DNA of 63,153 nucleotides, counting the filler, from Hausera hauseri (lineage: Eukaryota), in NCBI GenBank assembly GCA_046269625.1. It is 12 parts of 12 records of this genome, joined end to end, with 100 filler letters (N's around TTAATTAATTAA, not from the genome) between each part and the next. Parts side by side here need not be neighbours in the genome. Positions count along the whole stretch, not along the records: positions 1 to 8,148 come from JBJURY010750986.1; 11 more parts are not named here. The stretch is one strand, 5' to 3'. Numbering within the stretch: position 1 is the first letter of the stretch; every line of letters starts with the position of its first letter. The notes beneath the pieces were generated by a model. It worked only from the letters and a program-made list of their open reading frames with translations. It had not been told where the DNA came from and did not search any database. The translations under genes and the position numbers were made by a program. This document shows, piece after piece, positions 1-20,065 of this stretch.

Positions 1-557
1 GTGGATCAACAATTGTCTCTTTAATTGTATCGGCAGCATGTTTCTTTATTTGAGGTACTGCATCGAGTACATTTTGTGTATCCACTTTCTGATTGTGTGC
101 CTTTTATCTCCGTTTTATTAACCGTCTTTGTATTTTTTTCTAACCAATGACTCATCCACGAACCACTTCCTTCCTTTCCTTCTTTGGCGGGGGATATGGT
201 GCCATGTGCTCACATCTACCTACTTCTGTCTTTCTAAAATATTCCTTGAGAACCTATAGAAACAGACAAAAAATTCGAGATTTCTAAATTATTTTTGAAA
301 TTGTGTTACAAGTTTCGATTTGTTTCTTGTACAAGTCGGCAGCAGCAAGGGTACCAAAGGGAAATTGACTCGGTGTCAATACAATCCTGGTTTCATTTTA
401 ATAACACAACTGCTCACCGAGTCGCCGTTGTTTTAAAACTGTTGTCAATATTATCGAAGAATGATTTTTCCGAGTCACAGAAACCTTAAACAACGTTACT
501 TATGGACCAAAGTTCAGATGCTGCAAATTAAAAAAATGATAGTTTTTAATAAGATTA

Positions 558-1592
558 AAATGCTCAAAAGCGGATTTTACTAATGAACCTTGTAATATAA
601 AAAGGATAGAACCATAATCCTTTTCCAAAGCACCGAAGCATTTAAATACTGAAACTGTATACACAAAGCAGCCAAGAGGTAGGCCGAAAAAGAATTCACA
701 GATTATAAGTGACGCTAAAAAGAAGAGTGAATTCGAGAATGATGGAATAAGAAAGTCAAAAATGGACAGTGACAAAAACGTTTTACCAAGTATTAAGGGC
801 GAATCAACAACAAATTCACTAATCAACAACACAAATGAGGCGATTATATCATTTTAATTGAGTGCATGTCCTACGCCCGAAACTATTAAGAACAGTAGTC
901 CGATAACGACTGAAAAACTTGGATTATTTAATGAGTCCGACAGTAAAAACTAGCATTCTCCGCCAAAGAACTCACCATGGCTTAATATGTGTTATGTGTG
1001 TGATTATTCAAAATCTTCGTCTCATAAGTTTCCGTACATAGTTCAACGATTTTTATCGAAAGAACACATCGTCATATCTCTTACTCACTGGACCTCACCC
1101 ATATCTCCTGCGTTTGATGGTGGTTTGGAAGGCAGAGAAATATATGTACATAGACCGCCGCTGATGCTCGAAGCCATAAACTGACATCAGAGGCATAAGA
1201 CTAAAAATGCAACATTTATGAAACTCTTTACAAATATCGATTATCGACTAACGAACCTCAAATCGTCCCTAATTGTGACGTTATACGAGCAAGTCTCGGT
1301 AATTTTGGCGAATATTGAAAACAATCAGTACCAATAGGAATTAATTACGGTGTATTTTGAATAGCCCAATGAGGCATGGCTTAAAATCATTGATAAAACC
1401 TCAGACGATGCTACAGTTCTGCTAGATTCTCGAGTTTTCGGTATTGTAAGACCAATTTTAGAAATGATTGCTCGATCATTGTTGATGCTTCAAGACGAAT
1501 ATATTAATCAGCTTATCGAAATTTGCCCTACATCTTTTGATCGACTGAATCTTATGTCACTAAACCTTATTCGAATTACACAGAAGGTATGA
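558..1592 (+). pseudogene. Degenerate ORF of unknown family with an AT-hook motif
   Basis: One frame, interrupted by several stops, carries KQPRGRPKK (666-692), the CYVC-containing ORF 987-1184 and QLIEICPTSFDRLNLMSLNLI (1509-1571). Boundaries approximate. Confidence 0.45.
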
Positions 1593-2985
1593 GTCAATGG
1601 ATGTCTAGCATGTCAGCAATATAAAATACATAAACACCTCAAACCAACACTTTACCACTTCTCTTGCACTTCTCGTTTTGAAACAGTATATTCAGATATT
1701 GTGGGTCCTCTACTTTTCGACAGTGGTTATCAATATATCCATGATGGATCGTGCTTCCCGTTGGCTTGAAGCCGTTCCACTTTGATCAACCAACACCAAC
1801 TTAGTAGCAGATGCATTTATCAAGATATAGGTCAGCCGCTTTGGCTCACCACGTCACATCATAATGGACCAGGGTCCACAATTTGAAGCTGATATTTTCA
1901 CATCTCTTCTAAAGCATTTGGGTATAGCCCATCTCCATATGACGCCGTACTATCCCCAAGCAAATGGTATTCTCGAGAGATTTAATCGCACCATGAAGAT
2001 TTCCATAAAAATCCTGGCAAACAACAAACATAACTGGACCTCAATTCTTCCTCTTGTCCTACTCGGTTGGAGCAACACGCCATCCACCACCACAAGCTCT
2101 GAACCAGCTGAGGCTCTCTTTGAGACACCCGTTCGTGCACTATTTGAGCTCTCCAATCTCGATGAAAGTCTGTCAGATAAAGTTTTTCGTATGACACAGT
2201 TTCACGTTACTGATATCAACTAAAATGCATTTTGTCGTCTTATAAATAAAGACAAATTTTATATCCCAGAGGACTTATACTCAGCCAAGTTTGTATGCCT
2301 GAGGGATCTGTCACCTTCTGGTTTTCGGCCTCAATACGTTAACCCTTACAAATTACTGAACCTTTTTACGCACACCGCTACTATTTTACGCAAGAACAAA
2401 CCTCAAAACGTACACATCATTAATCTTAAGCCAGCAGTCTTCGTTGACGATGACGAGGATAACAGCATTGTCTCAAATTTCAACTCTAACTTCTCTACCC
2501 TCAAGCCTTCATCTAATTTCCTTGATGATTTTAATCTGTCGCAGCATTCACTATCGCGTCACAATTAGCTCTCTTCACTTCCGTCATCATCCACTGCTCC
2601 ATCAACATTGGCTTCTCCGTTATCGCCTGAACATCCACTGCTCATTTCACCGTTATCTCACGATTCTTTGCAATTTTCAGTTTTGTCTTCTGCGCGTGAT
2701 CCCTTACCCATTTCAGCTCCTTTTCCACTCTCTCCTCTTCATGAAGCATTCTCCCAAAACACAACAAAATCTACAGTATCCCTCCTTCAAACAACTCCAC
2801 AAGCACCAGTAACATCTAACAGATCACGTTATGTGACGTTTAATACTTACAGCAGGGAGAAGTTTATAGATGGAGTCCAACGTCTAACACGTACCAAAAC
2901 CGAATATGTACAAGCTCTTCTTTTACTACTATAATTTCTATTCATTTTTTCTCTTATTATTCTACGTTTTGCCACGGGGGAGTGA
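1590..2985 (+). mobile_element. Ty3/Gypsy family A (CsRn1-like) pol 3' end: integrase, Ser/Pro-rich tail, PPT
   Basis: CLACQ zinc-binding end, DIVGPL, DQGPQFE, TPYYPQANGILERFNRTMK. Tail ends YVTFNTYSREKFIDGVQRL. PPT GGGGGAGTGA at 2976-2985 is followed by TGT. Stops and frameshifts present. Confidence 0.92.
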
Positions 2986-3066
2986 TGTAGTGCTTAAAGT
3001 GTGGTCGCACAGGAGGGGTTAGCGAATTAATGGGAGGCCTTTCCCCACAATGTGACTACACTTTTA
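2986..3066 (+). repeat. Start of 3' LTR with imperfect hairpin
   Basis: TGTAGT directly after the PPT. AAAGTGTGGTCGCACA pairs imperfectly with TGTGACTACACTTT. Confidence 0.6.
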
Positions 3067-3116
3067 AACATTTTACGTGTAAATAATAATTTCAAATAAT
3101 ATATTCTTTTTGAATT

Positions 3117-4667
3117 ATGTTCAATAAATGTATAGAGTTAAAACGACTTTCTTTTGATATTTTAATCAAAACAGTGGACAAAAAACATACGTTATTTGCT
3201 GCGATATATCACAAAATTCTCGCGTTGCAGGAAAGTGATTGTACGTTGTTTGTGCAGCGGAATTTAACAGGCGATATTTCCATGCACCAACTAAACGTGA
3301 TTGCTAATTTTATATTTGTGCCTTTACTAACTAATCCCAAGGATCGGTGTCTGATATACCGTCATCCCCTCAATACTATAATCGGTACTAATATTCTCTC
3401 ATAATTGACAAAAACGCACTTGGTGATTTAACAAAAATACACCATTCAGTAAGACATCTGTGCCCCCGTCGAAAAGAATCAACAATAGTACCATTTGTAA
3501 TGAACATGTTAGTTCAGAATGAATTACTTTTAGGAACACTGATTTACGGTGGTTACAACTTGCCTGCATTTATTGTTGTTATCGTATTACCTTACGAAAC
3601 AAGATCGATTCTGAAGAGCCAACGATCCACAAAAGTGAATAACTAACTGACAGTTACTATATCGAAAAAGAAGCTTCAGAAAAGGAGTGGAAGGCCTAAA
3701 TCAGTCAGACTTATGCCAGCAACAAAAATACAAAGTTGACAAAATTAAATAGAATAATGGACAGTATGAAATTGGTCGAAATTTTCATAAAAATACATAA
3801 AAAGGCAAAATAAACCGATAGGAATATCATCTTGTCCCAATATTCCTCGAACTCAAGGTCAAATACTTGTCGATTATCGACAATAGTAGTTCCTATCCGA
3901 ATTTCAATTACCAATCAAATAAATCAGTGAAGGATATGATTGCCCTCATTACATCCATATGTATATATGCTATTAAATATTCTAATGTGTATTTATTGAT
4001 GAATAATAAAATGGCAGATTTTCACCAAGATTCAAAATACCCATTGATTATGGCAATGGCCAATATTTTGATTAGAAGCCAAACGTCAACTTTATTGAAA
4101 CGGAAGCCATTGTTTGAAGAAATCACAATGAAACACCAATTTTACAATACGATAATACCATTCGACGTGGAAATGCGTAGAGAATTTCTCGTCAAATATG
4201 ACAATTCAATTACTGGACAAGTCCGAATTTATCGCAATACATTTCCTACATTACATCAAACAAATGACAACAAGACAAGCAATTGTAGAAATGTACCGTC
4301 GTATATTTCTTACCGACATAAAACACAATCGAGTAGGTTCAGAGACAAAAGATTGGAATGCTTTGGTGATGCTGCTATTCAACCAATTACGGGTATTCGT
4401 CTGTTTAATATATTACTCGAACTATCCGAGGGGCATCTCGACGCCTTTTGCCAGGCTTTTGTTCAGAAACATTATCTAGCTGATTGGTCTGTGAGATTGG
4501 GTTTTCATAAACTTTTACTCTACACGCATAATACCAATTTCCCATACGATTCACTATTCACCCATGCCAGTTCAGACGCTTACAAAAGGTTCCTTTACGC
4601 ACAAGTTATCGAATTGACCGAAAAAATGAATTCTTTGGGTCTTACCACACTGAACCTTATACACTGA
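3117..4667 (+). pseudogene. Unknown ORF(s) downstream of the LTR head (putative cargo)
   Basis: ORFs 3117-3404 (95 aa) and 3867-4667 (266 aa), co-oriented with the element. No recognisable domain. Confidence 0.4.
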
Positions 4668-4941
4668 TGGAATTAAACTTGTATTGACAATTGTGACCGG
4701 TCGGGTTAAAACCATGTTTTCAACGGCTCAACCAATAGCTAAAAGATACTAGATAAAATATAGAGCGATACCACTGTTAATTTCGATAAATATTTGTTAT
4801 TAAAAAAATAATCCAAACGGGTAAAGAAATTCAAAAATTCAAAATAATGGCAGAAGATCAATCAAATCAATTTATTTCCACCTAAGTTCAAAAAATATCT
4901 AACATAAATACCATATTTAAACAAAAGGTATTAAAAACAAC

Positions 4942-6066
4942 TCAACAATACTTTGGTAAAAATCCTCTACAGTCTGACGAACTACAACAAACTATCGACG
5001 AAAAAATGGAATTTTGTTGATTTTCTTGACAATAACTGAATGTCAATTCTTCACCTTGTCGAATATTTCTGAAAGTAAAAAAAGAAACTCAACAATATAA
5101 AATGCTTGTTGTCGATATAGATTGGCAGAATATACAAATTCGGACTGCCGGAATGATTGATGATTAACGACTATGGCATATCGGACAGACTGTCAAAGGC
5201 CAACGGGCCACCATCGATGGAAATTACAACGGAATTTTTTCCGTATTGTATCAAAATTTAGCAAATAATTTCGTCCAATTGTTTTCAAATATTCTTTTCC
5301 TCTCGTTAAACTTTTTTCCAACGGAACATATTCTCCTTCATAATTAAGTATGAATGTATTCTCATTAATGTCCGTCAATGCAAACAACCCACTACCAACA
5401 CAGTCATTAACAGATTTAAAAAACACTTCTTGAAATTTGACATTTTCTGAATGAATCTATTTTCACATTCATTGTTACAAGAACAGTTAGAGTTGCATTC
5501 GTAGAGGAAAATTAATCTTGGTAGGGGATACTGAAAGATTACCTTGGTAAAAAGATGATTTAATCATCTGATTATATTTTCAGAAAATTCCGCCACAATT
5601 GTTAGTTAGAAAAGATTTAGTTTTATATGCGTTTGCTGACGATGTTTGGAATGTCAATAATCGCTGATAGGTTACGAGAATGTATTGTTGCTGGGATAAA
5701 TCGTCTGTTGTCACATAAATTTGAACTCTGTGATAGATGGATTGTTTTTAGAGTGGGACTGTTTTCGAATTTGTCAATACAGATTTTGATAAGACGTTAT
5801 CTGTCAAATTTAACGGCAAAGTCCACGAGCACTCTTTTTGGGTTTCTGTTCTACATATCTTTTAGTTATATTTGTCATTTTCTGAATCACAAGAGTCGCT
5901 TTCGTCATCAAAGATGTTTGTTCGAAAAATATTGATTGTTTGTTTCTTCGAAGATGTGACTCGATATTTCAGCTTTTCCTTCCAAGACGAAAAGTAATTC
6001 GTATAAAATCTAAAATTTTATTAGGAACATATGTAAATTCAATTCAGATATGTTTTCTATTTTCAT
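4942..6066 (-). pseudogene. Intronless Su(var)3-9/SUV39H-like histone lysine methyltransferase (pre-SET, SET, post-SET, possible N-terminal chromodomain), degenerate
   Basis: Manual translation across frameshifts gives LYECNSNCSCNNECENRFIQK (pre-SET, ~5445-5505), GSGLFALTDINENTFILNYEGE, TRGKEYLKTIGRNYLLNFD, TIDG, INHSGSPNL (~5135-5160), VSFFTFRNIRQGEELTFSY (~5032-5088) and VCCSSSDCRGFL (post-SET). Stop at 4944-4942, ATG at 6066. Motif order and spacing match SUV39H as recalled. Confidence 0.88.
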
Positions 6067-6067
6067 C

Positions 6068-6197
6068 AGTTAACATTTTTAAGGCGGAAAATCGGGGTCT
6101 GCCTATGCGCCCGACGCGCCTGTGGCGGAAAATCCGATCGTGACCAACCAAATGGGCCGGAGGGCGACGGTCGACGCGGGCTCCACATCACACCCCT
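6068..6197 (-). repeat. PPT and GC-rich 3' LTR head of a family A element
   Basis: PPT AGGGGTGTGA (6197-6188), then TGTGGAGCCCGCGTCGACCG from 6187. The ~120 bp head is homologous to 17641-17760, and homology ends exactly at the TGT. Confidence 0.8.
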
Positions 6198-8148
6198 GTG
6201 GAAAAGTTAGAACTATAAAAAATAAAAGACAGAAAAAAAACGCAAAACGAAGTGTTTTAGCTGAGCTTAGTGTGAATAAGACGTTGAATGCCTTCGACTG
6301 ATTTTTCCCTACTATACTAGCTGAATGTGACTCTGCGTGTGGTATGTTTGTGCAATGTGTCTGTTTTTAGAGATTGATGTTGGGGAAAAATTGGTAGATT
6401 TTGGTGTAGGTGTTGTGTCGCGTGAAGGTGAATCGGAATAAAGAGAAGAAAAAGACAAAGAAGAAAGAGGGATTGTTAAAGACGGATGGTTTAAGGTATT
6501 GGAAAGAATTTTAGAAGACGAAGGAGTGACGAAAGGTGTAGTGACGGGTAAAGAAAGAGAGGAAGAAGTTGGAGTAGAAATTGGAGTTGTGTTGAATGAA
6601 AGAGTGGAAGAAGATGATACAGAGGTAGTGGTAGAGATAGGAAGAGTGGAAGAAATAGAAGGAAGAAGTGTAGGAAATGATGGAGCAAGACTGGGCGCGG
6701 AAGAGGAAGGTGGAAATGGTGTAGCAATAGATGTAGTGATAGCAGGGAGTGGAGGAGTAAGAAAAGAGTTTGACGTGTCGGTTGCTAAGGTGTCGTCGAC
6801 AAAAAAGGCAGGCTTTAAGTTGGTGATGTGTACTGTGAAGTCTTTGCCGTCTTTGGAGATGATGGCGTTATGCGAGTGTAGCTTTATAAGTTTATAGGGC
6901 CCCATGTACCGTGGCTGAAAACCGAAAGGACCTTGATTTTCAGCCATACGAATTTAGCCGTATACAAATCTTCGGGTAAGTATGTTTTGTCTTTGTAAAG
7001 TATCCTGCAGAACGAATCTTTGCTGACCTCGACGAAGTATTTTCCGCTGCCCGTATTGTCTCTTCCGTAGAAATGTCGTCTAGGGCAATTAGTTCGAATA
7101 ATGATCGGACAGGAGCTCCAAGTAAGGCTATAGTAGATGAGCTTCCTGTAGAAGTGCACGGAGTGTTCCGACAGTCGAGCAAAACGAACAAAAGAAGATT
7201 TGTCCAACTACTGTTGGACTCTGCAAGAATTCTTAGTGACGTTTTCAATTCACGATGGAAACGTTCTAGGAGGCCATTTGATTGGGGGTGAGAAGGTGTA
7301 GTAAATATATGGTGGATACCCAATCGATTGACAAGGGATTTGAACAGGTTGGATTCAAACTGTGGACCCTTGTCCATGATGATGAAGCGAGGTTATTCAC
7401 ACCTGCTAATCCATGTGCGAATGAAAACGTCAACTATGGTGTCAGTGTTTTGCTCCGCAGAGGGATGGCTTCTGGCCATCGCGAGGAATGGTCCATCATG
7501 GTGAAGATGAATTGATGACCGTTGTCTGGAGGAATAGGGACAACGATGTCGGTATGCACGGACTCAAAACGCGGTGTGCAGGGAAGTGGAACAGTAGTGG
7601 CTTTTAATGCTTAGCTGTTTTGTATTTTTGGCAAGACACACACTCTTTAATCCATGCCTGCTCATCAGAACGCATTGACAACCATATTACTTGTCGATGA
7701 AGTAGACGAAAAGCGGCTTTAGCACCAGAATGGTGTAGTGAATGCACATGGTGCTAGATTTATTACTGAATGGCTTAGTTTGGAGGTGTCCAAAGCCATG
7801 CCGTCAACGATTGTGCAAGATTTAAAAGACGTAAGCACGTCTTGAGGTGGCTGGTTTTGTTGAAGTTGTTCGTGCGTAAAAATCGGAGAAAAACTAATCG
7901 AACTAACCGACCTAGATAAAAAATCAGCAGCTAAATTGTTAACTCCGTTAATATGTTTAATATCGAAGTAAAATGTCGATAAGTATGATATTTGTCATTC
8001 TTGGCCTGTGGAAGGGTGTTTATGGCCATGCTGTTAAATAAGGGTTTGCGATAGGTTTGTATAGTGAAATAACGAGCGACAAGCAGGTGTAAGAAGTGCT
8101 TTAAAGCGAGAATGATTGCCAATAATTCTCGATTAAACGTGGGATATC
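6198..8148 (-). mobile_element. Ty3/Gypsy family A pol: RNaseH end, integrase, Ser/Thr/Pro-rich tail
   Basis: ELLAIILALKHF, HSLHHSGAK, DKGPQFES, HPQSNGLLERFHRELK, PRYMGPY. Tail ends RRVTFS*YSREKSVEGIQRL. Degenerate. Confidence 0.93.
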
Positions 8149-8248
8149 NNNNNNNNNNNNNNNNNNNNNNNNNNNNNNNNNNNNNNNNNNNNTTAATTAA
8201 TTAANNNNNNNNNNNNNNNNNNNNNNNNNNNNNNNNNNNNNNNNNNNN
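8149..8248. other. Artificial contig-joining linker (first of 11)
   Basis: 44 N + TTAATTAATTAA (stops in all six frames) + 44 N. Identical 100-nt linkers at 8149, 14604, 19196, 23607, 27694, 31838, 39599, 45570, 49791, 55000 and 59074. Confidence 0.99.
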
Positions 8249-8559
8249 AAACATAACTATACATCCTGTTGCTTCAAATGTAGTATCATATTTCAAAATT
8301 TAACACACATAATCTGCATTAGTTAAAACTTAAATAATTCTTGTCAGAAGGACAAATTTTTACTGTTTTAAAAAATTCACATTTGTTTAATAATCTGCAT
8401 AAAAGACACTGATTACATTTTATATGAATCTTAACTTTTTTCACATGTATTTGATTATTAACATTTGTTATGAATTATTCTTACAACCACTACTGTATAT
8501 TTAACAATTATTTTTAATTTTAATACCCTGTATAGCCACCATTTTTAAAATTACTTTAT

Positions 8560-9420
8560 ACACCCGTTCTTTTATTGATAAAACTAAGTTTTTTAGATAT
8601 TCCTCCAACATTTCTTCCCAGGTTCGACAAATTGATGCTTCCAATTGAGAAACGGTGCCATATTGTCGTCAACTGGAGTAGAAATGTATTCTCAGCCGCT
8701 TTCCATCGGATTCAAGTCGGGAGAACGAGGTGGCCACGGCAGAACAGGAACTAACCACTCGTATGTTGATTTTGAAGCATGAATAGGAGCATTGTCCTGT
8801 TGGAAAATACTTCCCCGGTCAGCCATTCTAACTATCACGAAGTAGTCCGCACCTAAAGTACATCCTGATAATCTTGGGATGTTGATCGTGTCTGTACAAG
8901 TCGTAGTTCGCTCCTGCCGTGACACCGAAATGCTCCCCAGAACATACATAAACTGCCTCCTGAAAAAATGTTTAAGATGTACAAATGCTTGAGAGATAAT
9001 ATGTCCCTTAACTTACCAAATTGAAGTTTTGAAAAAATTTCCTTTTCCTTCTTTAAATCATGTCATTAGTGTACGAATCTGTCCGGACCGTCAAGGTTGA
9101 ATTTTTCTCATGGGAAAATACTATTTTCTCCCACTATTTCGTCAATGTCCGATGCTCTTTTGCAAATTCAAGATGGTTCTACTTCTGTTTCTTCTTGAAT
9201 GTGGCTAAATTCTTCGTTTTCGCCATTTTAAATAATTTGTTCATTTAACAATGTTGTAGACGGTCCTAAAATTGGCTCTGGTAGGCAAATCTCTTTAGAT
9301 CGATCGAATAGAATCTCTTCCTAAAGGAGCCAAACTGGCTACAATTCGTTTGTCTCTTAGCTTAAGAACTTGCTTCCTACCTGGGAAATGATTTTGCTTA
9401 GTATATTTTTTACCTATCTT
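8560..9420 (-). mobile_element. Tc1/mariner-superfamily (Tc1/Tc3-like) transposase remnant
   Basis: [10 protein letters not shown]...[12 protein letters not shown], plus upstream FSHEK/FNLDGPD motif. Frameshifted; boundaries approximate. Confidence 0.88.
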
Positions 9421-9459
9421 CAATACATTTTTGAATTTTTTTGAATTTGTTTGTGAGTT

Positions 9460-12400
9460 CAGACGTATTAACTTGAAAGGCCCAATGTACTGAGGTTGGA
9501 ACCCTGCGACACTGGATTTCTCAGACAGACAAATTTAGCTGTATACAGAGTGTCAGGAATATATGCTTTGTTGTCAATTAAAAACTCTGCAAAACGAATC
9601 GCTATTTAACGCAACAAAATGTTCCTGCGCAGCCCGAATTGTTTCGTCGGTGGGTGTTTCATCGCATTACGCTAACTCAAACAATGCACGTACTGGTGTA
9701 CCAAAGAGTGCTTCAGAAGGATAGCAGCCAGTGGTTGTAGATGAAGTGTTCCGCCATCCAAGTAAAACGTAAGGGAGAAGGTTTATCCAGTGTTGATTGG
9801 AGTCTGATAATATTTTAAGAGAGATTTGCATCATGCGACGAAAACGCTCCAGTAGCCCATTTGACTGGGGATGATAAGGTGTTGTGTGGATGTGTTTGAT
9901 TCCCAGTCGATTTACTAGTGATTTGAAGAGGTTCGACTCAAATTGGGGGCCTTGATCCGTGATTACGTGCTTACGCGAGACAAATCGGCTGAGCTACGTG
10001 CGTATGAAGACATGTCCAATGGTCTCAGTGTTGGTTGAGCGAAGCGGAACGGCTTATGGCCATGTAGAAGCACGATACATTATAGTAAGAATGAATTGAT
10101 GGCCATTGTCTGGTGGTAGTTGACCAACTATATCTATATGCACTGTGTCAATGCGTAATGTGCAGGGAAAATGATAGACTGACGGCTTTAGGTGTTTGGC
10201 TACTTTAAACTTTTGGCATGCCGCATTTTCCATAACCCAATCATGCACATCTGTTCTCATTGATGGCCATATAACTTGGTGTTTAAGAAGGCGATAAGCA
10301 GCTTTGGATCCTGGATGATGCAGGGAATGGACATCGGTGAAGGCGGTTTTTTGCAAAGAAGGTGATAGAATAATTTTAGTAAACCTAGGATTAGAGGTGT
10401 CCAAAGCTACACCATCAACGATTTTGTAAGATTTGAAAGCGGAGAGAATAGAGACGTCTGGCTAGTTCCGTCGGAGCAACTAGTTGTCAAACATGGGTGC
10501 AAATGTGATCGAATCGACGGAAAGCGATAAAAAGTTAGGCACTAAATTATTTACCTCTGAAATATGTTTTATTTCAAACGCGAATGTCGAGAGGTACGAT
10601 ATCTGTCTCCTCTGACGTGGAGATAAAGATTTCATTGTGAGAATATGAAGTAGGGGCTTGTGGTCCGTTTGAATGGTGAATGTGCGTGAAATTATCAGAT
10701 GTTTAAAATGCCTTAATGCTAAGACCATTGCAAGAAGTTCCTTATCAAAAGTTGAATAGCGCTGTTCAACTTTTGCGAATTTTCTTGAGAAAAATTCAAC
10801 AGATTGATGAGAACCGTCGTTGAATTGACGCAATATTGCACTTGCTGCTGTTGTGGAGGCGTAAGTTGTTAGGAAAAGTTCCGAGTTTGGATTAGGGTAT
10901 GCAAGGATTTCTACAGTTTTTGGATTATCTTTGAGGTATTCGAAATAACTGACTAAGTCAACAGTCCAGTGAATAAGCTGGTTCTTCTTATCAGAGCTGA
11001 GTGAGGCAAATGGTACCGTAAGTGTTGAACAGTGCGGCACGTACTTGTTCACAAAGTGAAGTGTTCCGAGAAAGGAGCGCATTTCGGTCGATGTTCGTAG
11101 TAGTTTAATGTTTTTGAGTTGATTGATGCGATCTTGCTGAGGAGTGTGACCAGACTGAGTAATAACTTGTCCAAGAAAATTGATACCACATTGGAAAAAG
11201 GAGCATTTGGAAAAGTTTACATCAATGTTCAGCATGTTGTTTGGGAGACGACGAGACAATGAGTATGTCGCCTGCGTATTGAAAAGCAAAATTTAGGCCA
11301 GTAAGAACAGTGTCTATGTGTCTTTGGAATGTTCGCGAGGCACTGTGAAGAACAAAGGCATATAGACATATTCGAAAAGACCGAATGGTGATATTACAGC
11401 CATTTTCGGTATGTCAGCAGAAGCGACTGGAATTTGGTGATATGCCTTGTGGAGATCGATAGACGAAAAAATTGTTTTACCATTGGGTCTGTGCAATATG
11501 TCATTGATCAGTGGAAAGGGATGTGCCTCCATGATCGTTATGGTGTTTAATTGACAGTAGTCACCACAAGGTCTGAAAGTACCGTCTTTGTTGGCACGAC
11601 ATGCAAGGATGAAACCAAAGGTGACTTAGAACGTCTGATGATGCCAACGTTCTCTAAAGTTTGAAACTCTTCATCGACGGCTTTTCTGCCACGTGGTCAA
11701 AGAGTTCGCACTTTTTGCCGAATTTGACGTTGATGAGAGGTAACTATGTGGCGAAATGTTTTGGAGAGAAATTTAAAGCATGGGTCTTTTAGAGAATTCT
11801 TGGGAACTGCGTAGTGACAAATGTTTGCAGATCCGTTGATAGTTGGCAGAAAGATGGTTGGAATGGAGACACATGTTTGTCAGTGTCTAAGGTGGTTTGG
11901 TTTGATGTTATATTGTTGGAAGAGAGAGACTTGGTACTCTTAACACTCGAGGTTTGATTATGTGAATTATTTATAATATTCATATTTTTAAAGTAGATTT
12001 TATATCAGGTTTAGAAATTGGTTGAGTTAAATTGTTGTCAGTAACAAAATTATGCGCTGGTGAAATTGAACTCAACATATTCGAAACCGACATGGCTTTA
12101 GAACAAACGGCGGAGCTTTCCATCAAACGACGCTCTCTGCAATCAACTAGCAAATTGTATTGTGAAAGAAAATCAGATACAAGAACTGGTCTTTGTACAT
12201 GTGCTATAATGAATTTCCAAGAAAAAGGTTTGGAAAAATTTGACGGAGAAAAATAGAAATGTGCTGTGTCAATGGTACGCAACGGTTCACCATTGGCAGT
12301 AAATAATGATTTACCGGTTGAAGAAGATTTCTGAGATTTATATGAGAGAGGAGGAAGTGAGACTGTAGCTCCAGTGTCAATGAGGAAAGAGATAACAGAG

Positions 12401-13840
12401 TTTTTGGGCGTAATGGTAGCTTGCAGTGTAAAGACAGCAAAAATGCGTTACGGCTGTTTAATGAGGTGTTTGCGTTTTGACCAGAGATTGCTGTTACTTC
12501 TGGTGGCATTGTCAGTTTTTTGAAGGCGTTGCTGAGTTTGACTGCGCCGAAGAATTTTAAAATTTACAGCCTGATGATAAATGCAGACGGCGTCATTTGA
12601 TGTAAAATTTTGATTGTAGAATCTGTATCCTATGCAGCATTTATTGGCGCGTTGCTTAAATTTAGAGTGAAAAAAAAACAGATCAGGCTGTGCGCAGGAG
12701 AGTTGCCACACGAAGAACAATTCGATTTAGTTGGGAATTGTCTATTCCCAGAAAAAAGATCTACTCGGTAATGTAATGTGATTAAGTTTTCCTGTTATTG
12801 CTGTAATAGCTTGTCTTAAAGCTAGATTCTCCGCGTGTAATGACTGATTATCAATAATCGAAATTGCGTTTTGAGTGTATGTCGTTGGTGTTGTTATTGC
12901 TGCTGCAATGCTGGGCGAATTTTGAGTATGTAGTATATCGTAGCTTTTGTCAGTCAACTGGGCTAATTTTTCCAGTGAGGCGCTGTCCTCAACGATAGTA
13001 AGCAGGGCCCTGATCTCTTTCGGCAGGAATTGGAGAAAGTAGTGACGTATGAGATCAGCATTATGGTTTTGGGTCACACCCAGAGTACTAAGCTGTAAAA
13101 GGGATGTCCGAAGACATTCGGACGGTTTGATGTGACCTAATGCTTTTTCATTAAAGAGTTTTTGGATTATTGCATCGATAGATGGTTCGGTGAGCTTTAG
13201 AACTGCGGCGTGAAATGAGATATGTGGGTCCGCTTCAGCAAAGATTTCCATAAGATTTGATAAACGTGATTTTAGAAAAGAAGGAATGTAAAGAAGGAGG
13301 CTGTTGGCTTTTAAGAAAGAATCTGTCAGATTGTGAGCTTTTAACCAACGAGCATGGACGTCCAGCCAAGTCCGGGGAGAGTTTTGGCTGTCCAGAAAAA
13401 ATCGACACACTGGAACGTTGAGGAGTTGGAAGATGATTACCTAGATGACTAGGTATGAGTGACGTTTTTTTATGCTCCAAAGTATCGAGGTTAATATCAG
13501 AACCACGAAGAAGGCGAGGTTTAATTGATACGATTGGATGAACGGATCAGAGAAGCATGTGCAAGGGTGAATTATTTGAGTATTGGAGGAGAAGACCATT
13601 ATGATGAAGATAAAAGGTTTTAAAGACGAAATGGTGTCTGATAAAAGAATATAGCTGTTGCATTGTCGTATTTGTACATGTATGGTATGTGAATAGCATT
13701 TTATTAAGAAAGAAAAAGGAAATATAGGTCGGAAAGTGAATGCCATAGGCATGACGTGGTGCGCGAAGTACAGGCGTGCCCAGGCTCCAGGCGAAGTTGT
13801 GTTCGGGCCGTCTAACCGGAGAAATGGCGGCCAGAAACAA
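9460..13840 (-). mobile_element. Ty3/Gypsy family A element, near-complete gag-pol, degenerate
   Basis: Gag 12742-13410, CHCC remnants ~12550-12680, protease FLIDTGATVS (~12370), RT (IDLHKAYHQIPV, PFGLFEY), RNaseH (FFSRKF...YSTFDKELLAM), integrase (HSLHHPG, DIVGQLP, DQGPQFES). Confidence 0.95.
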
Positions 13841-13869
13841 TACCTAATGCCTCCCGTTCAGGAACGCAT

Positions 13870-14603
13870 TATTTGAGGAACAATATTGAATGCTTTGAAT
13901 GTTGTTCGTTGATTTTTTGTGTGAGTTACGTCGACGATGTTTTTTGCATTATTCCTTGTAGTTTGTTGCATTTCGTTTCGTGTTCGGAATTACACTTTGA
14001 GCAAAGTGTAATATTTCTGGGCCGCCTGAATGAGTTAAAACGTTATTCATCTTCCAATTCAATAAACAAAATCAAAGCTGTTAAAGCTTGAATTGAACTC
14101 TCTCGACTGTTCGTCATAATTGCACAAAGAGGCTGATCATCCAAATCTAAATGTATAGAAGAGTTTAGAAGAATACAGAGAAATATTATACTTGTGTGTA
14201 GTATACTTAGTGCTGCATTTGTAATATTTTTATCTAGATTTGTTCATTAATAAATGTTTTACGTGTCAATCTTGTTCACAAGCAATAAAACATGACGAAT
14301 AATATTTATTTACAAGTCTTTTTACAAAATCAGTGATTGTAGAAATAAATTTATTCTCTTTTGTCGCAGTCGAAGACAATTCCTGTAACAAATGCAGTAG
14401 ATAACGATATTCTTCCCGTTGTAAGGTGAGATTTTCCAATGCTTTTTCTGCTGGGATCAATTCAAATAGGATCCATAACGTATCATTTGTTAAAATTGAT
14501 TCTAAGTTTCGTAACGGGAAAAATTTCGGAAAACCACTTGCAATGTTGCGTTCACTTTCAGGTTTTATATAACAAACCGAACTGCTATCTGTTGTTATTT
14601 GGT
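13870..14603 (-). pseudogene. Unknown degenerate ORF upstream of gag, co-oriented
   Basis: ORF fragment 14266-14460 plus adjacent coding-like sequence. No recognisable domain. Confidence 0.25.
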
Positions 14604-14703
14604 NNNNNNNNNNNNNNNNNNNNNNNNNNNNNNNNNNNNNNNNNNNNTTAATTAATTAANNNNNNNNNNNNNNNNNNNNNNNNNNNNNNNNNNNNNNNNN
14701 NNN

Positions 14704-16747
14704 TCCCCCGATTTTAATACAAGCAACATCGTTTGCATCTATCACGCAAAATTTGGAACAAAAGCACAAAAATGCCTACCGGGCTGTATCTACAACACGC
14801 ACAATAAAATCAACAATACTAAACTCACACAAAATAGTAGGCCAAACTCACCAGCTTTAAAACACTGATTTCGCCGCTAGGAGACACGGCAAGTTCTAGC
14901 AAAGGCAACAACCTACAAAAAGATAGCCGACACATTTCTTGCTGTATTCACGTTGGAAGCAGCAGTCGTCACTCCAACAAAGCAAAACATTAATTTTCTC
15001 ATAGAAACCGGCGTAGCAATCTCTTTACTACCACCAACATAGCACATCCAAAACAATTTCACTTCAAAAAGCAACTGTTCACTGCGTTTGGTGAACCTTT
15101 ACAAACTTTTGGTGTTACTAAATTAACTTTTACACTTCCAAATTTCCCAAACATATACACTTGGACATTTACAGTAGCCAATATACGCACACCTATATTG
15201 GGTTCAAACTTTCTGTCCCACTAAAATTTACTTGTAGATTGCAAACGATGTTCCTTAAAGAGCGGAAATAACTTTAATTAAATTAGAAGCATTTTGGTGA
15301 CCACCCGGGCGATCGCTTACAGCAAGTCAATACTAAAGAAAACGACTTCCGACTTAAATTATTTTTATAATCATTCATTATATAGAAATTTTTATTACGG
15401 CAACAAGTACGATATTGCCAACTGCGTGGCACCTATTACTGATAGTACAGCTGCCAACACCATCTTCAACACGAAAATCCTGCACTTAATACCACCTTGT
15501 CACAACTCCTTGTCTACAACTCATACCTCAACTGCATCTAGTCACGATGCATCGACACCATCTGAAAACTTTTCATCGTTGCCCTCTGACTTACAGCAAT
15601 ATATTTTGTCTTCCTGAACGCGTCTGTTGCAAAAGGACAAATCATCCACATGACATCACATAGTAACAGTACATCAAAGACCAATACGTCAAGGGTCCTC
15701 CTGCTATCGCCTCACCTCAGACAGGCTGTGGAGACTCAGTTTCTCGAACAGGAAAAATCAGGAATAATCAGAAGATCCAAATCCCCGTAGTCTTCACCCC
15801 TACATGTGGTTTTAAAAAAGATGGTACCTTTCGCCCATGTGGTGATTACCGCCAACTCAACATCATAGCAACAATGGATGCCTACCCTCTACAATTAATC
15901 AACGATATTCTTCACAGGCTCCATATTTTTTTCCTGCATTGATTTGCACAAAGCATACCACCAAATTCCGGTGGCCCCAGCAGACATTCCGAAAGCGGCT
16001 GTCATTACACCTTTCGGACTTTTCGAATACTTTTCCATGCCTTTTGGACACCGCAGCGCTTCCCAGACATTCCAAAGGCATATTGACACAGTTCTCTCAG
16101 GTTTACACTTTGTTTATCCCTATACCGATGACATCCTAATTGCATCATCTTCCTCGAAACAACACTCCGAACACTTAGGTTTAATCGTCCAGCGCTTGCA
16201 CCAAAACAACTTGCAAATTAATTTCTCCAAATGCTCTTTTTTCAACATAATGTCAACTTCCTAGGACATATTATTAGCTCATCCGGACATTCACCTCAGC
16301 CAGAGCGCATCACACAGCTTAAAAACATATGGCTACCACGTACGTCAACAAAAATGCGTTCTTTCCTCGGAACCTTGCACTTTATTCATAAGTATATTCC
16401 ACACTGCTCCACTGTAACCGTTCCATTTGCATCACTAAACTCTGGCAAGAAAAACAGCCTATTCAATGAACTGCCAAGCTAGTCAACGCTTTTGATCATC
16501 TCAAAGATAATCTAAAAACTGTGGAAATCCTGACCTATTCCGACTCCCATGCAGAACTCTTTTTAACCACGGATGCATCCATAACAGCTGCAGGTGCTGA
16601 CCTCCTTCAAGTAAAAAGTGGATCCCATGAGCCATTAGAATTCTTCTCTCGAAAATTTACGGCACAAGAGCAAAGATATTCCACCTTTGACAGAGAGTTG
16701 CTTGCAATGATCCTTGCCGTAAAACACTTTAAGCATCTGCTAACCGT
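14704..16747 (+). mobile_element. Ty3/Gypsy family A: gag end, protease, RT, RNaseH (truncated)
   Basis: CIYHAKFGTKAQKCLPGC (CHCC), FLIETG, HKAYHQIPVAPADIPKAAVITPFGLFEY, YTDDILI, TDAS, YSTFDRELLAM. Confidence 0.95.
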
Positions 16748-17123
16748 ATTAAGTCAATAATAAATATCAAAAATGACAGAAATAATCGAAACGGCTGAAA
16801 CGACTAAATTCCGTAATTAATAGTTAATGAACCCAAATGGATTTCAAAAAGTTAAAAATAAATATCCACACAAATGAAAATGTATGACGATGAAATTCTA
16901 AAATAAAATCTGAAAATCGTACCACCAAAAATTGAGTTTGACAATGACACAGTAAAAATTCAAAATGTCCCAAGTAAAATCGCCATAATCAATTTATTTT
17001 TCAATTTTTCCAAAAAAGCACGTATATAACATTTAAACAACTTATTTTTTTTAAATCACAAAAAAAATATTTTCCGTTACATGAAATTCAAACACGAAAT
17101 CACAAATTGATTGTTTTTAAGAA

Positions 17124-17760
17124 ATCGGGTCACCACCTAAATTGATCTGTAATTGCTAAAATTTACAAATTGACATCGCCGAACAAAATTCTAGAAAATC
17201 ATGGCAGCTAATAATATATTGAAATATTGACGGTGTTCGGATTGACAAATTTCACAAATGAAATATTTACACTAAACCGTAAATTTAAAATGTACACAAG
17301 TGCAAAATCTAATAATAAAATTATAAGTTCAATGTACGCGACCAAATGTCAGTGAATTTCAAATGAAAACCGAGCAGTACAAAAGTAGAGTTAAGGAACG
17401 AATGATAAGAATGAAATTAAACTTGAATAAATACAGCTGGACAATGCAAAATTGCAAAACCAAACGACTCCAATAAAATGTCTGCTAAATTTCAGTGATT
17501 TCAAAAATGTCTGTGATAGAATCATCGGGGATATCCATTTCGTGGGTATTGATATCGGATCGAAAATCGGAGAAACTTGCAGTAAAGGTCTCAAATTCGT
17601 TCATTCAACAATGTCACTAGTCCTTTCGAAAAGTATTTAAAATTGACATTTTCAAGGTGGAAAATCTGGATCCGCCTATGCTCCCGACACGCCGGCGGTG
17701 GAAGCCCGGCCGCGCCCAACCGTATGGGCCAGAGGGCAAACGGTCGACGCCGGCACCACA
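17124..17760 (-). repeat. Probable family A 5' LTR with tRNA-Trp-like primer binding site
   Basis: Starts TGTGGTGCCGGCGTCGACCG at 17760 (homologous to 6187). TGGTGACCCGAT at 17135-17124 resembles the tRNA-Trp PBS used by CsRn1-clade elements. A terminal CA is not cleanly adjacent to the PBS. Confidence 0.6.
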
Positions 17761-18420
17761 ACTGGTGTAGTTAAAATCCTTAACAAAATTGTTAATCTTA
17801 TACCAAATATAAGGAATCCCATCTCGATAATTTCTTTGAGAAATTCTGTTGGCCTCATACTTGATTTAAAATTGGACTTATAAATTCGTTTTAAAAGTAC
17901 AAAATTATATTTATTTTATAATGGAGACAATGACAAATAAATGCGTTTGCGCTAAAATGTTAACTATTTGTTTCAGGGAAGTTTTACGTGGTATTTTTGT
18001 TTAAAAGCATCTAAATAGTGTAAATAAAGTCCCAGAAGCCTGACATGTACTCAATGACAGGTGAATAAATGTTTCTCAATCACTCACCTGCTGTAACTCA
18101 AATGACAAACACACACAAACAAGCCGTTAGTTTACTGTCGATAATTTACACAAACATATGACATTTATAATTTTCATAAGAATTTTCCCTGATATCGCAG
18201 TTACTACAGTCTCCACATTTCGACCAGAGTCGATCCTCTGATAATCTTTGACCCCTAAACTGTTTTATCAAACCCCAACTACTAGTTACTGAGTGATGTA
18301 ATAAATCGTTCCAAAAGTAAATGTATTTACAGATAAAACAATAATCTGATAAATCGATGTCTGTCTAAGAGAGTTTTCTTCACGCTAACGGTTTTGTAAA
18401 AAATCGTACATCTGGCCCAC

Positions 18421-18613
18421 CTTATAAACGTCGTAATTTTCAAGGATCCCATCAAAGCATGAGTAGAGATCGTTGAGAAGATTGATAATCTGAACAGGTT
18501 TCAGTTGTGAGCACATTTCGGTGAATCCAACTATGTCACTGAAGTAAATGGTCACACAGTCATACTGTTCGGGTTCCACAGTCAGTCCGGCCTTTAGTCG
18601 ATCAGCCACAGAT
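18421..18613 (-). CDS. Internal exon of a receptor-type guanylyl cyclase (class III cyclase catalytic domain)
   Basis: [64 protein letters not shown], bounded by an AG acceptor (18615-18614) and a GT donor (18420). Confidence 0.92.
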
Positions 18614-20065
18614 CTTCATACATCAGTCAGGAAAAAGATTTATCAATAATACATTTTAAACATCATCAGTATACAAACACATTTTTTGTCATTCACAGAC
18701 AGACACAATTATAAATAAACCAGGACAAGAGCGACCAGCGCAAGACAAAGTCTTGACACGAACTAAGTGAAGTCCTATGTTTCTCAGACATTTGAAGGAT
18801 ACATTAAAAGAAGTAGCAACAGAGCTGTGCTTTATTGAGCTGTTCTCGCTATATATGATAAATACATTAGCGGATTGTGGAGTCAGGAACAGTAAGAGGA
18901 TAAACACTAATATATAGCAACGCCACGGCAGTTGGTACCCCAGAAACAGTCAAGGTATATTACGTTACCAAAAGTGAAATATAACCCCCGTATTTAAGAT
19001 ATGCATTTTTAGACAATGATAACCTCTGTGGCAATGTATTACCAAAGATGTTCTCTTATTTAAATACAACAAGGAAAGCGTTTATGAAAATTACTATTGG
19101 AGGATACATCTTTCATTTGGGAATGGTTTGGTCGACAGGCTTCGTGTTCGTCTTTCAAACGTGACAAGAATAACGACATTTCGAAACCGGCTGTGNNNNN
19201 NNNNNNNNNNNNNNNNNNNNNNNNNNNNNNNNNNNNNNNTTAATTAATTAANNNNNNNNNNNNNNNNNNNNNNNNNNNNNNNNNNNNNNNNNNNNGAATA
19301 ACACGGTGACATCACCTTCTCTATGAACATGTTAATGGAGCTTGGCGTGAGGTGAGGAGAGTATCTAAACTTTTGTATTTCCAGTAACATAACTTGTATT
19401 CTTTCGATTATTTTTTAATTTGTATTTGTGCTTGTACATTTATTAACGATTTTTAGTTTGTTTCATCAGGAGGCATATCACTGACCTATATTTTATATAA
19501 TGTGCGAATTAGTTGATGAGGGTAGAGGAAGGTAGAGGAAGTGGTCGTATACTGCACATAGTTGCGATGCAGCCTAGATAACTAAAATACCTACCGCACG
19601 CTGCTGAGTCCTCCTATAATGACAAAGAGGAGGGCGCGACAGGCCGCTTCTGACGGAGGCACCAGCTATTTATCTGCACTGGTAAGCTACCGTCCGTCTC
19701 ATGGCAGGCAGCCTGCAATCAGTAAGGTTCTGACTCACCATTAGCCATAAAAGAAGCTGTTCGGTCTGAAGGCAGCTATATATTCTGCTTTTAAAACCGT
19801 TTGACAAGACGAAAAGGTCAATCAAATTTGCACAGCTGAAGCTGTAGATGGGTGGAGCTGAAGGAGCCTTCCAAGAAAAGCAGATTACATAAAACAATTT
19901 ACATAAGCACAGGACAAACAAAAAATGAAGACGTATAAAAGGAATGACTCTTTATGACTTTATTGCTAAGAGTCTATCGCTATAATTTTATTTCAGAGAG
20001 TTTATTACTACTTCTACCCTATATCTAAGAGTTTAATACTATTCTCTATTTCTAAGAGTTTATCT

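What the first reader, a model, noticed from the sequence alone, without database searches (positions are those of the whole stretch)
4942..6197. SUV39H/Su(var)3-9-like H3K9 methyltransferase ORF inside the 3' LTR region of a CsRn1-like Gypsy
Seen: an intronless ~375-codon degenerate ORF with pre-SET, SET (NHSxxPN, GEELTFSY) and post-SET motifs. A weak chromodomain-like start (FLIKF..YTNYFSSW) needs frameshift repair. Its ATG (6066) is ~120 bp after the PPT/TGT boundary, on the element's strand, exactly where similarity to the other LTR copy (17641-17760) ends. AATAAA follows at ~4876-4871. The host gene in this window is intron-rich, so an intronless copy suggests passage through RNA. Established: SUV39-family enzymes deposit H3K9 methylation that silences transposons. 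Inference: the element captured the silencing enzyme as LTR cargo, possibly to manipulate or decoy heterochromatin. This copy is now broken.
Basis: partly seen in the sequence, partly recalled or inferred. Interest (0 to 1): 0.88.

Follow-up and report, generated by a model that had tools for sequence, protein, structure and literature searches.

The report
Decayed SET-gene fragment inside Gypsy LTR
A broken, partial copy of a cellular SET-domain histone-methyltransferase gene sits inside the long terminal repeat of a Gypsy retrotransposon, but it is only one of many host gene fragments this element family has picked up at the same spot, and nothing suggests that it works.

Summary
The SET homology is real, on the minus strand at about 5585-4942. 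It has the end of the pre-SET motif, the SET domain and the post-SET motif, and it is broken by stops and frameshifts. The proposed 375-codon ORF starting at ATG 6066 is a mosaic, not one gene. No chromodomain was found.

The fragment lies inside a true LTR (6187 to 4775, TG...ACA). This follows the integrase and polypurine tract of a decayed Gypsy.
- **Head:** about 114 nt, with at least 762 candidate copies in the genome.
- **Tail:** TATA-like box, AATAAA at 4876-4871, and U5.
- **Copies:** at least four contigs carry the SET-LTR (90-93% identical). Their 5' and 3' flanks differ, and two copies are followed by a partial primer-binding site.

Other LTR variants with the same head carry other cellular cDNA fragments, all in sense orientation: SNF2/RAD54, ABCF, AAA, RNB, ATRX-ADD, ion channel, Frizzled and Noggin. 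A sister LTR lacks SET.

The best reading is LTR-mediated retroposition, meaning reverse-transcriptase template switching into U3, followed by a few rounds of copying. The cargo is a 5'-truncated pseudogene. It is closest to short SET proteins without a chromodomain, not to SUV39H proper. The decoy idea has no support.

The parts
6315..8148 (-). 3' part of the pol gene of a decayed Gypsy element: RNase H end, integrase zinc finger, integrase core, and a Ser/Thr-rich C-terminal tail ORF. It runs off the piece's edge.
   Evidence: Pfam rve_3/rve on 6940-7377. Frame-by-frame translation shows several frameshifts. Read depth here is 2,000-20,000 against about 50 for SET.
6188..6201 (-). Polypurine-tract-like sequence just before the LTR.
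   Evidence: The same GCCACGGGG..TGA motif precedes TGTGG in 13 other loci that have a pol tail.
4775..6187 (-). Whole 3' LTR (1413 bp, TGTGG...TTAACA) that carries the SET fragment.
   Evidence: The 5' end is exact at TG in five contexts: PPT/pol upstream in the window and L029, unrelated flanks in L002, L009 and L028. There are three different 3' contexts: the window, L002/L028 and L069.
6074..6187 (-). Conserved GC-rich LTR head (start of U3). It ends in ...CCTTAAAAATG.
   Evidence: At least 762 candidate copies in the genome. Sequences diverge right after it, and contigs show loose ends at 6075 and 6187. No RNA structure signal (z 0.3) and no Rfam match.
6047..6073 (-). Other cargo variants share it.
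   Evidence: The same stretch precedes the RAD54-like, ABCF, AAA/Noggin and SET continuations.
5829..6046 (-). Segment a of the LTR middle (acidic, no domain). It is not part of the SET gene.
   Evidence: It occurs in L029 without SET, and in L031 inside a mosaic with an ABCF fragment. No Pfam hit.
5604..5828 (-). Module b of the LTR middle. It also occurs without SET.
   Evidence: L007, L008, L010, L011, L025 and L027 match only this stretch. In L007/L008/L010/L029 a different sequence X follows it.
4942..5585 (-). 5'-truncated cDNA fragment of a SUV39-family SET gene: end of pre-SET, SET, post-SET and stop TGA at 4944-4942. It is broken by stops and frameshifts.
   Evidence: Pfam Pre-SET/SET on pieces. 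PDB best hit SUV39H2. P0004 residues 46-249 align to 5539-4945 with 5 stops inside. Copies are aligned.
4775..4932 (-). Conserved LTR tail: TATA-like TTTAAATA (4921-4914), AATAAA (4876-4871), U5 ending in ACA.
   Evidence: Positions 4854-4932 match the tails of LTR variants with other cargo (L024 85%, L008 and L010 75%). L050 has the same layout. The tail architecture aligns up to the PBS in other family members.
2986..4774 (+). Insertion target: a high-copy repeat. Here it follows the PPT (2971-2985) and LTR start (TGTAGTGC, 2986) of a second, convergent Gypsy. It holds a 266-aa ORF (3867-4667) with an RNase III-like domain.
   Evidence: At least 366 candidates in the genome, with homology ending at 4774-4779. 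In L077, L080 and L082 the same sequence runs on into the leader and gag of a Gypsy. Pfam Ribonuclease_3: 1.2e-4 in the window, 5.5e-6 in L082.

Best explanation
The SET sequence is a passenger pseudogene in the U3 region of a Gypsy LTR.

Inferred origin: during reverse transcription, the enzyme copying the 3' LTR switched template to a co-packaged cellular mRNA of a short, chromodomain-less SUV39-family SET gene. It copied from just after the stop codon back to the middle of pre-SET, then switched back to the element's RNA. Everything between the polypurine tract and the primer-binding site is duplicated at the next cycle, so the insert became part of the LTR and was copied a few times with it.

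Shown: the LTR anatomy, the multiple copies with exact ends, a sister LTR without SET, and other cargos at the same site.

Inferred: the template switches, their order, and that the donor was a host mRNA.

The fragment has no start codon of its own, lacks part of the zinc cluster and is broken in every copy. It most likely does nothing.
For: - **LTR anatomy.** PPT, then TGTGG...ACA. The head has at least 762 candidate copies, and the tail with TATA-like box and AATAAA is shared with other variants.
- **Copies.** SET-LTR copies are in C750986, C241038, C339935 and C853158, 90-93% identical. The 5' end is exact next to PPT/pol or next to unrelated flanks. There are three different 3' flanks. In L002 and L028 a 2-3 nt spacer and 10 nt of the family PBS follow. 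The full PBS has 342 hits against 1 for the control pattern.
- **Sister LTR.** L029, L007, L008 and L010 have head-a-b-X-tail without SET. About 9 nt are shared at the switch point.
- **Other cargo behind the same head.** SNF2 5e-17, ABC_tran 2e-17, AAA 3e-9, RNB 1e-37, ADD_ATRX 2e-7, Ion_trans 3e-15, Fz 1e-4, Noggin 5e-17. Head + cargo + tail was verified for SET, Fz (L024) and Ion_trans (L050).
- **Orientation.** All domain-bearing cargos are in sense. ORFs of 90 aa or more number 35 forward against 16 reverse.
- **Decay.** All copies are broken. dN/dS is 0.4-0.7 on only 17-28 changes, not distinguishable from 1.
- **Known mechanism.** It matches LTR-mediated retroposition: partial mRNAs, multi-gene chimeras, microsimilarity at junctions, and secondary copying (PMC5131818).
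Against: - No parent gene was found in this assembly. So 'host mRNA', 'intronless' and the microhomology at the junctions cannot be checked against a donor.
- No contig holds a whole element, so SET in both LTRs of one element and target-site duplications were not seen.
- The return point near the end of the head recurs in many variants. Random microhomology switching does not by itself explain this. It may reflect selection for the head, or an unknown hot spot.
- dN/dS below 1, though not significant, leaves room for some past constraint.
- The junction at 4775 joins two repeats in a very fragmented assembly, and no listed independent contig spans it.
Confidence: 0.72

Rival explanations
1. 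Functional cargo: the element keeps a SET methyltransferase, or its RNA, to manipulate or decoy heterochromatin silencing.
For: The cargo is of the H3K9-methyltransferase family. Several other cargos are chromatin or RNA-processing genes: ATRX-ADD, SNF2, INTS7, RNB, RNase III. dN/dS point estimates are below 1.
Against: The fragment is 5'-truncated with no start codon of its own. Every copy has stops or frameshifts, some of them shared. SET depth is about 1/200 of head depth, so it is a rare variant. Unrelated cargos such as an ion channel, Noggin, Frizzled and ABCF sit at the same site. No RNA run was found.
Confidence: 0.05
2. An ordinary processed pseudogene, or a piece of a host gene, lying by chance beside a truncated LTR and later multiplied by segmental duplication.
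For: The copies are old (7-10% apart) and few. The assembly is too fragmented to show whole elements.
Against: There is no poly(A). The unit starts exactly at the LTR's TG and ends at the LTR's ACA after a conserved tail. It has different flanks on both sides, and a PBS follows in two copies. Many other cargos have the same head/tail frame.
Confidence: 0.06
3. The SET gene is an old accessory gene of this retroelement lineage, or was acquired from outside the host, and was not captured from the host. The copies seen are its last remnants.
For: No host parent was found. The best matches to the nearest intact relative P0004 in this genome are the LTR copies themselves. The nearest relatives P0001 and P0004 are unnamed short proteins of unknown context.
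Against: A sister LTR has the same modules a and b but another sequence in place of SET. The fragment is truncated. SET-LTRs are a tiny share of the family. Other variants hold plainly cellular genes.
Confidence: 0.07
4. Capture by read-through transcription and splicing from the LTR into a downstream host gene, as in retroviral oncogene transduction, rather than by template switching.
For: The junction recurs near the end of the head in many variants. Some cargos start near a start codon: L049, and INTS7 in L028.
Against: There is no GT donor at the junction. Many cargos, SET among them, start in mid-ORF and are flanked on both sides by LTR sequence, which needs two switches. Mosaics of several genes occur.
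Confidence: 0.08

Closest known systems
LTR-mediated retroposition (Tan et al. 2016, PMC5131818; Ty1 chimeras in yeast; maize Bs1)
   Same: Partial cellular cDNA embedded in an LTR retrotransposon. Sense orientation, no poly(A), short shared sequence at a junction, multi-gene mosaics, and secondary copying of the chimera.
   Different: Here the insert lies inside the LTR (U3), between a conserved head and the promoter/R/U5 tail. In the described cases it replaces internal ORFs. The same slot is filled by many different cDNAs across one family. Junctions right after the PBS also occur.
MMTV sag ORF in the U3 of the LTR, and U3 inserts in retroviral vectors (from my own knowledge, not tested)
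   Same: Coding sequence tolerated inside U3 and therefore present in both LTRs after replication.
   Different: sag is intact, expressed and selected. The SET fragment is truncated and decayed.
Retroviral oncogene transduction
   Same: A retroelement picks up spliced host sequence and carries it on.
   Different: v-onc genes lie between viral genes and the 3' LTR, usually arise by read-through plus one recombination, and are functional.
SETMAR lineage / short chromodomain-less SUV39-family SET proteins (helminth SETMAR of 262 aa, PMC10915263)
   Same: Pre-SET, SET and post-SET with no chromodomain. The nearest intact relatives, P0001 and P0004, are 252-265 aa. The ML tree groups the copy with named SETMAR-like proteins.
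   Different: The grouping is weakly supported and the AU test does not exclude a position next to SUV39H. In the PDB the relatives score SUV39H2 slightly above SETMAR.
Pack-MULEs and Helitrons carrying gene fragments
   Same: A TE family whose members carry varied host gene fragments, mostly non-functional.
   Different: Those capture DNA, including introns, in either orientation. Here the capture appears RNA-based, sense-only and inside an LTR.

Membership tests
SUV39 family of SET methyltransferases (broad sense) | SET domain | tested here: met
   Pfam SET matches two pieces (E 3e-3 and 4e-3, each below the gathering score on its own). A 122-aa open piece of copy L002 finds 98 SET proteins, best 3.6e-16.
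SUV39 family of SET methyltransferases (broad sense) | Pre-SET zinc cluster before SET | tested here: inconclusive
   Only the last part is present (Pfam positions 83-101, E 1e-4). The fragment starts in mid pre-SET, so the first cysteines are missing.
SUV39 family of SET methyltransferases (broad sense) | Post-SET Cys motif after SET | tested here: met
   A Cys-rich motif followed by RGFLPKYC and a stop is read directly at 4990-4945. It aligns to the post-SET of P0004.
SUV39H / Su(var)3-9 proper | N-terminal chromodomain | tested here: not met
   No Pfam Chromo hit at E<=10 on any upstream piece. The upstream stretch consists of modules that also occur without SET. The host's own chromo+pre-SET gene is elsewhere (L055).
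SUV39H / Su(var)3-9 proper | Groups within the SUV39H1/2 clade in a tree | tested here: inconclusive
   The ML tree puts it outside the SUV39H clade (split 100/99). The AU test gives p 0.063 for the copy alone and 0.35 with P0001 and P0004. The branch is long and only 122 aa were used.
LTR of a Ty3/Gypsy retrotransposon | Follows integrase and polypurine tract, with TG...CA ends | tested here: met
   rve domains at 6940-7377, PPT at 6201-6188, TGTGG at 6187, ACA at 4777-4775.
LTR of a Ty3/Gypsy retrotransposon | The same unit occurs as a 5'-type copy followed by a primer-binding site | tested here: met
   L002 and L028 have unrelated upstream flanks. The unit ends with a spacer plus 10 nt of the family PBS. 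The full PBS has 342 hits against 1 control.
LTR of a Ty3/Gypsy retrotransposon | Both LTRs of one element carry the insert, with target-site duplication | not testable with these tools
   No contig holds a whole element. The assembly has 909,086 contigs.
LTR-mediated retrocopy (template-switch chimera) | Partial, sense-oriented cDNA flanked on both sides by sequence of the LTR element | tested here: met
   Module b lies upstream and the tail downstream. The sister LTR has X in place of SET. Sense bias is shown.
LTR-mediated retrocopy (template-switch chimera) | Intron loss relative to a parent gene, and microsimilarity with the parent at the junctions | not testable with these tools
   No parent was found in the own genome. 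About 9 nt are shared between the SET-LTR and the sister LTR at the 5' junction, which is suggestive only.
CsRn1 clade of Gypsy elements | Gag with a CHCC-type zinc knuckle (recalled from memory) | tested here: inconclusive
   The window holds no gag. Gags of related elements (L028 6723-7169, L082 3119-3433) show a C-x2-H-x9-C-x3-C pattern. That these belong to the same family as the SET-bearing element was not shown.

The most novel reading that the evidence does not exclude
This Gypsy lineage has a U3 'cargo bay'. Between a ~114-nt head and a ~160-nt promoter/R/U5 tail, the LTR is repeatedly refilled with sense-oriented fragments of cellular mRNAs. The internal region right after the PBS is replaced in the same way. 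The family would then act as a large-scale engine of retrocopy formation and exon shuffling in this animal, with a preferred re-entry point that hints at a specific strand-transfer mechanism and not random microhomology. SET would be one such cargo.
Probability: 0.35. Interest if true: 0.65.

Novelty: new variant of a known kind. Interest (0 to 1): 0.4.

Why it matters
The SET fragment alone matters little. It is a dead, partial gene copy, and the appealing idea that a transposon stole its own silencer is not borne out.

The context matters more. One Gypsy family carries many different host cDNA fragments inside its LTRs and directly after its primer-binding site. LTR-mediated retroposition in animals has so far been described from a handful of cases per genome, with inserts replacing internal ORFs. 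A family with a hypervariable, cDNA-filled U3 would offer a natural system for three things:
- studying reverse-transcriptase strand transfer;
- dating and counting retrocopy formation;
- asking whether LTR-borne gene fragments feed small-RNA pathways against host genes.

It is also a practical warning for gene annotation in this genome. SET, SNF2, RNB, ABC, Noggin and RNase III hits may be LTR cargo, not genes.

Tried and rejected
- **Chromodomain at the ORF start:** no Pfam hit at E<=10.
- **Parent gene:**
  - The SET piece as protein finds only the LTR copies.
  - Pre-SET family search finds five other loci, including a true chromo+pre-SET SUV39H (L055). None is close by tblastx or blastn.
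  - The nearest intact relative P0004 finds no better locus.
- **Spliced-leader idea for the head** (it ends in ATG, as flatworm leaders do): dropped. The conserved unit is 114 nt, starts at the PPT boundary, and is followed by LTR tails.
- **Structured RNA in the head:** z-score 0.3 and no Rfam match.
- **'TGGTATCGC' after the LTR end in the window as a PBS:** rejected. It is part of the flanking repeat, which runs on uninterrupted in L077.
- **'TGGTGTCAGA' inside L024:** a chance match inside an ORF.
- **tRNA genes in L073/L074:** they hold the PBS complement, but ARAGORN finds no gene.
- **Selection test:** dN/dS 0.4-0.7 on 17-28 changes, not informative.
- **Expression:** no RNA run holds the stretch. 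Only two contig-level runs do, so nothing can be said about transcription.
- **Integrase homologue search for taxon hints:** no hit within the length limits.
- I replaced it with a coordinate-based listing.
- **Locus allowance:**, the genome search could cut out no more loci. Later loci came from the fetch from genomes.

Full report
**What is in the sequence**

On the minus strand the piece holds the 3' part of a Gypsy pol gene (8148 to 6315). It comprises the RNase H end, the integrase zinc finger, the integrase core (Pfam rve_3/rve) and a Ser/Thr-rich tail ORF. The gene is itself broken by frameshifts.

A polypurine-tract-like motif (6201-6188) follows, and then TGTGG at 6187. Pfam matches:
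- Pre-SET on 5378-5563 (E 1e-4, only profile positions 83-101).
- SET on 5196-5456 (3e-3) and on 4945-5088 (4e-3).

The pre-SET piece hits SUV39H2 and Clr4 best among solved structures. The SET piece alone is not specific. So the SET homology is real and degenerate.

**The ORF is a mosaic**

Homology to the nearest intact relative (P0004, 252 aa) covers only its residues 46-249, at window 5539-4945, with five stops inside. Upstream of about 5585 the sequence consists of separate modules:
- A 26-nt extension of the LTR head (6073-6047).
- Segment a (6046-5829). It also occurs in L029 without SET, and in L031 inside a mosaic with an ABCF fragment.
- Module b (5828-5604). L007, L008, L010, L011, L025 and L027 have it without SET.

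In L029, L007, L008 and L010, module b is followed by an unrelated stretch X and then, where the contig reaches, the LTR tail. The SET-bearing and X-bearing forms part after about 9 shared bases.

No chromodomain is detectable. The SET insert therefore lacks the gene's start and the first part of the pre-SET zinc cluster. It ends 12-15 nt after its stop codon (TGA 4944-4942).

**It lies inside a true LTR**

The head (6187-6074) has at least 762 candidate copies in the genome. Contigs of public runs pile up on it to a summed depth of about 11,000, against about 50 on SET.

In 13 loci the head is preceded by the same pol tail and PPT. In others, unrelated flanks abut exactly at TGTGG.

The last ~160 nt (4932-4775) carry a TATA-like TTTAAATA (4921-4914) and AATAAA (4876-4871), and end in ACA. 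This tail recurs in LTR variants with other middles: L024 at 85%, L008 and L010 at 75%, and L050 by layout. Its architecture aligns with family members up to the primer-binding site. The AATAAA is thus the LTR's own signal.

**Copies**

SET-bearing LTRs are found in C750986 (the window), C241038 (L002, 90%), C339935 (L028, 93%) and C853158 (L005, 91%). The 5' contexts are:
- PPT/pol in the window.
- Unrelated flanks in L002 and L028.
- L009, which has another flank but ends before the SET region.

The 3' contexts are:
- The window.
- L002 and L028, which share a 2-3 nt spacer plus TGGTGTCAGA. That is the first 10 nt of the family PBS, which as a 22-nt pattern has 342 hits against 1 for the control.
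- L069, with a third flank.

In L028 the partial PBS is followed by the 5' UTR and an open 248-aa INTS7 N-terminal ORF (Pfam 1.7e-51).

In the window, the flank below 4775 is a high-copy repeat with at least 366 candidates. It runs on uninterrupted in L077, and elsewhere it leads into the leader and gag of a related Gypsy. So the SET-bearing element appears to be nested in another element. This pattern of exact ends and varied flanks is that of an LTR, not of a duplicated genomic block.

**State of the copies**

No copy is intact.
- A frame change near 5419 is private to the window.
- One near 5255 is shared by the window, L002 and L028, but not L005.
- An in-frame TAG near 5170 is shared by the window and L028.
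- A frame change in the T-run near 5080 is in all four copies.
- L002 lacks 35 nt at 5059-5025.
- L028 lacks about 200 nt of head and segment a.

dN/dS between copies is 0.4-0.7, but rests on 17-28 changes and cannot be told from 1. No RNA run holds the stretch.

**Which SET gene**

A 122-aa open piece of L002 finds 98 proteins among 1.84 billion. The best are two short proteins, P0001 (265 aa, 43% identity) and P0004 (252 aa). Both have pre-SET/SET/post-SET and no chromodomain. Next come named SUV39H1/2 proteins.

P0001 and P0004 score SUV39H2, then DIM-5, then SETMAR in the PDB.

In an ML tree the copy, P0001 and P0004 fall with named SETMAR-like proteins, outside a 100/99-supported SUV39H1/2 clade. 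The AU test does not reject a position next to that clade (p 0.063 and 0.35). Helminths are reported to have a 262-aa SETMAR-lineage gene (PMC10915263).

The family assignment is SUV39 family in the broad sense. SUV39H proper is not shown.

The host has its own chromo+pre-SET gene in L055. No parent of the cargo was found.

**SET is one cargo among many**

Behind the same head, other loci carry these domains:

| Pfam domain | E-value | Locus or loci |
|---|---|---|
| SNF2 (RAD54-like) | 5e-17 | six loci |
| ABC_tran | 2e-17 | L016 |
| AAA | 3e-9 | L019 |
| RNB | 1e-37 | L039 |
| ADD_ATRX | 2e-7 | L042 |
| Ion_trans | 3e-15 | L050 |
| Fz | 1e-4 | L024 |
| Noggin | 5e-17 | L015 (also L022, 5.5e-8) |

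The full head + cargo + tail layout is verified for SET, Fz (L024) and Ion_trans (L050).

All domain-bearing cargos are in sense. Long ORFs favour the element strand 35 to 16. Mosaics of several genes occur (L031, L039).

Full PBS copies are likewise followed at once by different sequences, such as a mid-ORF INTS7 fragment in L061-L066.

**Interpretation**

These features match LTR-mediated retroposition by template switching: partial mRNAs, chimeras, microsimilarity at junctions, and secondary copying (PMC5131818). The particular point here is that the insert lies in U3 and so becomes part of the LTR.

The recurring boundary at the end of the head has two possible explanations. Only chimeras that keep the head and the tail may be able to replicate, or there may be a specific strand-transfer hot spot. 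I could not tell which.

The decoy or anti-silencing reading has no support. The cargo is truncated, broken, rare within the family, and not special among cargos.

**Limits**

- The assembly is very fragmented (909,086 contigs), and no whole element was seen.
- No parent gene is known, and there are no RNA data.
- The species is unknown to me.

Noticed in passing
window 2971-4774 (+): A second, convergent Gypsy (integrase at 1864-2223, PPT 2971-2985, LTR start TGTAGTGC at 2986). It is followed by a high-copy repeat (at least 366 candidates) with a still-open 266-aa ORF (3867-4667) bearing an RNase III-like domain (Pfam 1.2e-4 here, 5.5e-6 in L082). Copies 75-91% alike keep long ORFs. In L077, L080 and L082 the repeat runs straight into leader and gag. 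I did not settle whether it is LTR or leader, or whether the RNase III piece is a Drosha/Dicer fragment under any constraint.
   Followed up: partly
L061-L066, L071, L072, L075, L076: The 18-19 nt PBS (342 hits against 1 control) is preceded by an AT-rich LTR end and followed at once by a different sequence in each locus, for example a mid-ORF INTS7 fragment in L061-L066. Junctions exactly at the end of the PBS suggest aberrant transfer of plus-strand strong-stop DNA.
   Followed up: partly
L063 1-1520, L066: The order pol tail - PPT - ~700-bp LTR - PBS - INTS7 fragment lies on one strand, so a 3'-type LTR is followed by a PBS. This is the layout of tandem elements or one-LTR circles. Two loci 80% alike share it.
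   Followed up: no
L028 (C339935) 149-5777 (-): Downstream of the SET-LTR and its 10-nt PBS remnant come, on the same strand, an open INTS7 N-terminal ORF (248 aa), an INTS7 helical-bundle piece, a CPSF_A-type piece, and then a Gypsy leader and gag. Either host cDNAs are inserted between PBS and gag, or two elements abut.
   Followed up: partly
L031 (C96454) 1200-2400: A patchwork of an ABCF fragment, an unknown ORF piece, the 'segment a' of the SET-LTR, and a further ORF piece. This is a multi-gene retro-mosaic with no LTR head at the junctions.
   Followed up: partly
L055 (C255334) 21-830 (-): The host's own SUV39H-type gene: chromodomain and full pre-SET in one 271-aa open frame, unrelated at DNA level to the LTR cargo.
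   Followed up: partly
window 4777-5083, 5549-5771, 6047-6520: A run labelled as a different organism (X2, organism B) holds contigs 93-99.6% identical to parts of the SET-LTR and the head. It is either the same or a very close species under another label, or the element is shared.
   Followed up: no
L073 1500-1560, L074 1486-1550: The PBS complement continues as a tRNA-like 3' half (GGGATTCGAACCCAC...). From memory it resembles tRNA-Leu, but ARAGORN calls no gene. These are perhaps tRNA-derived repeats or decayed tRNA genes.
   Followed up: partly
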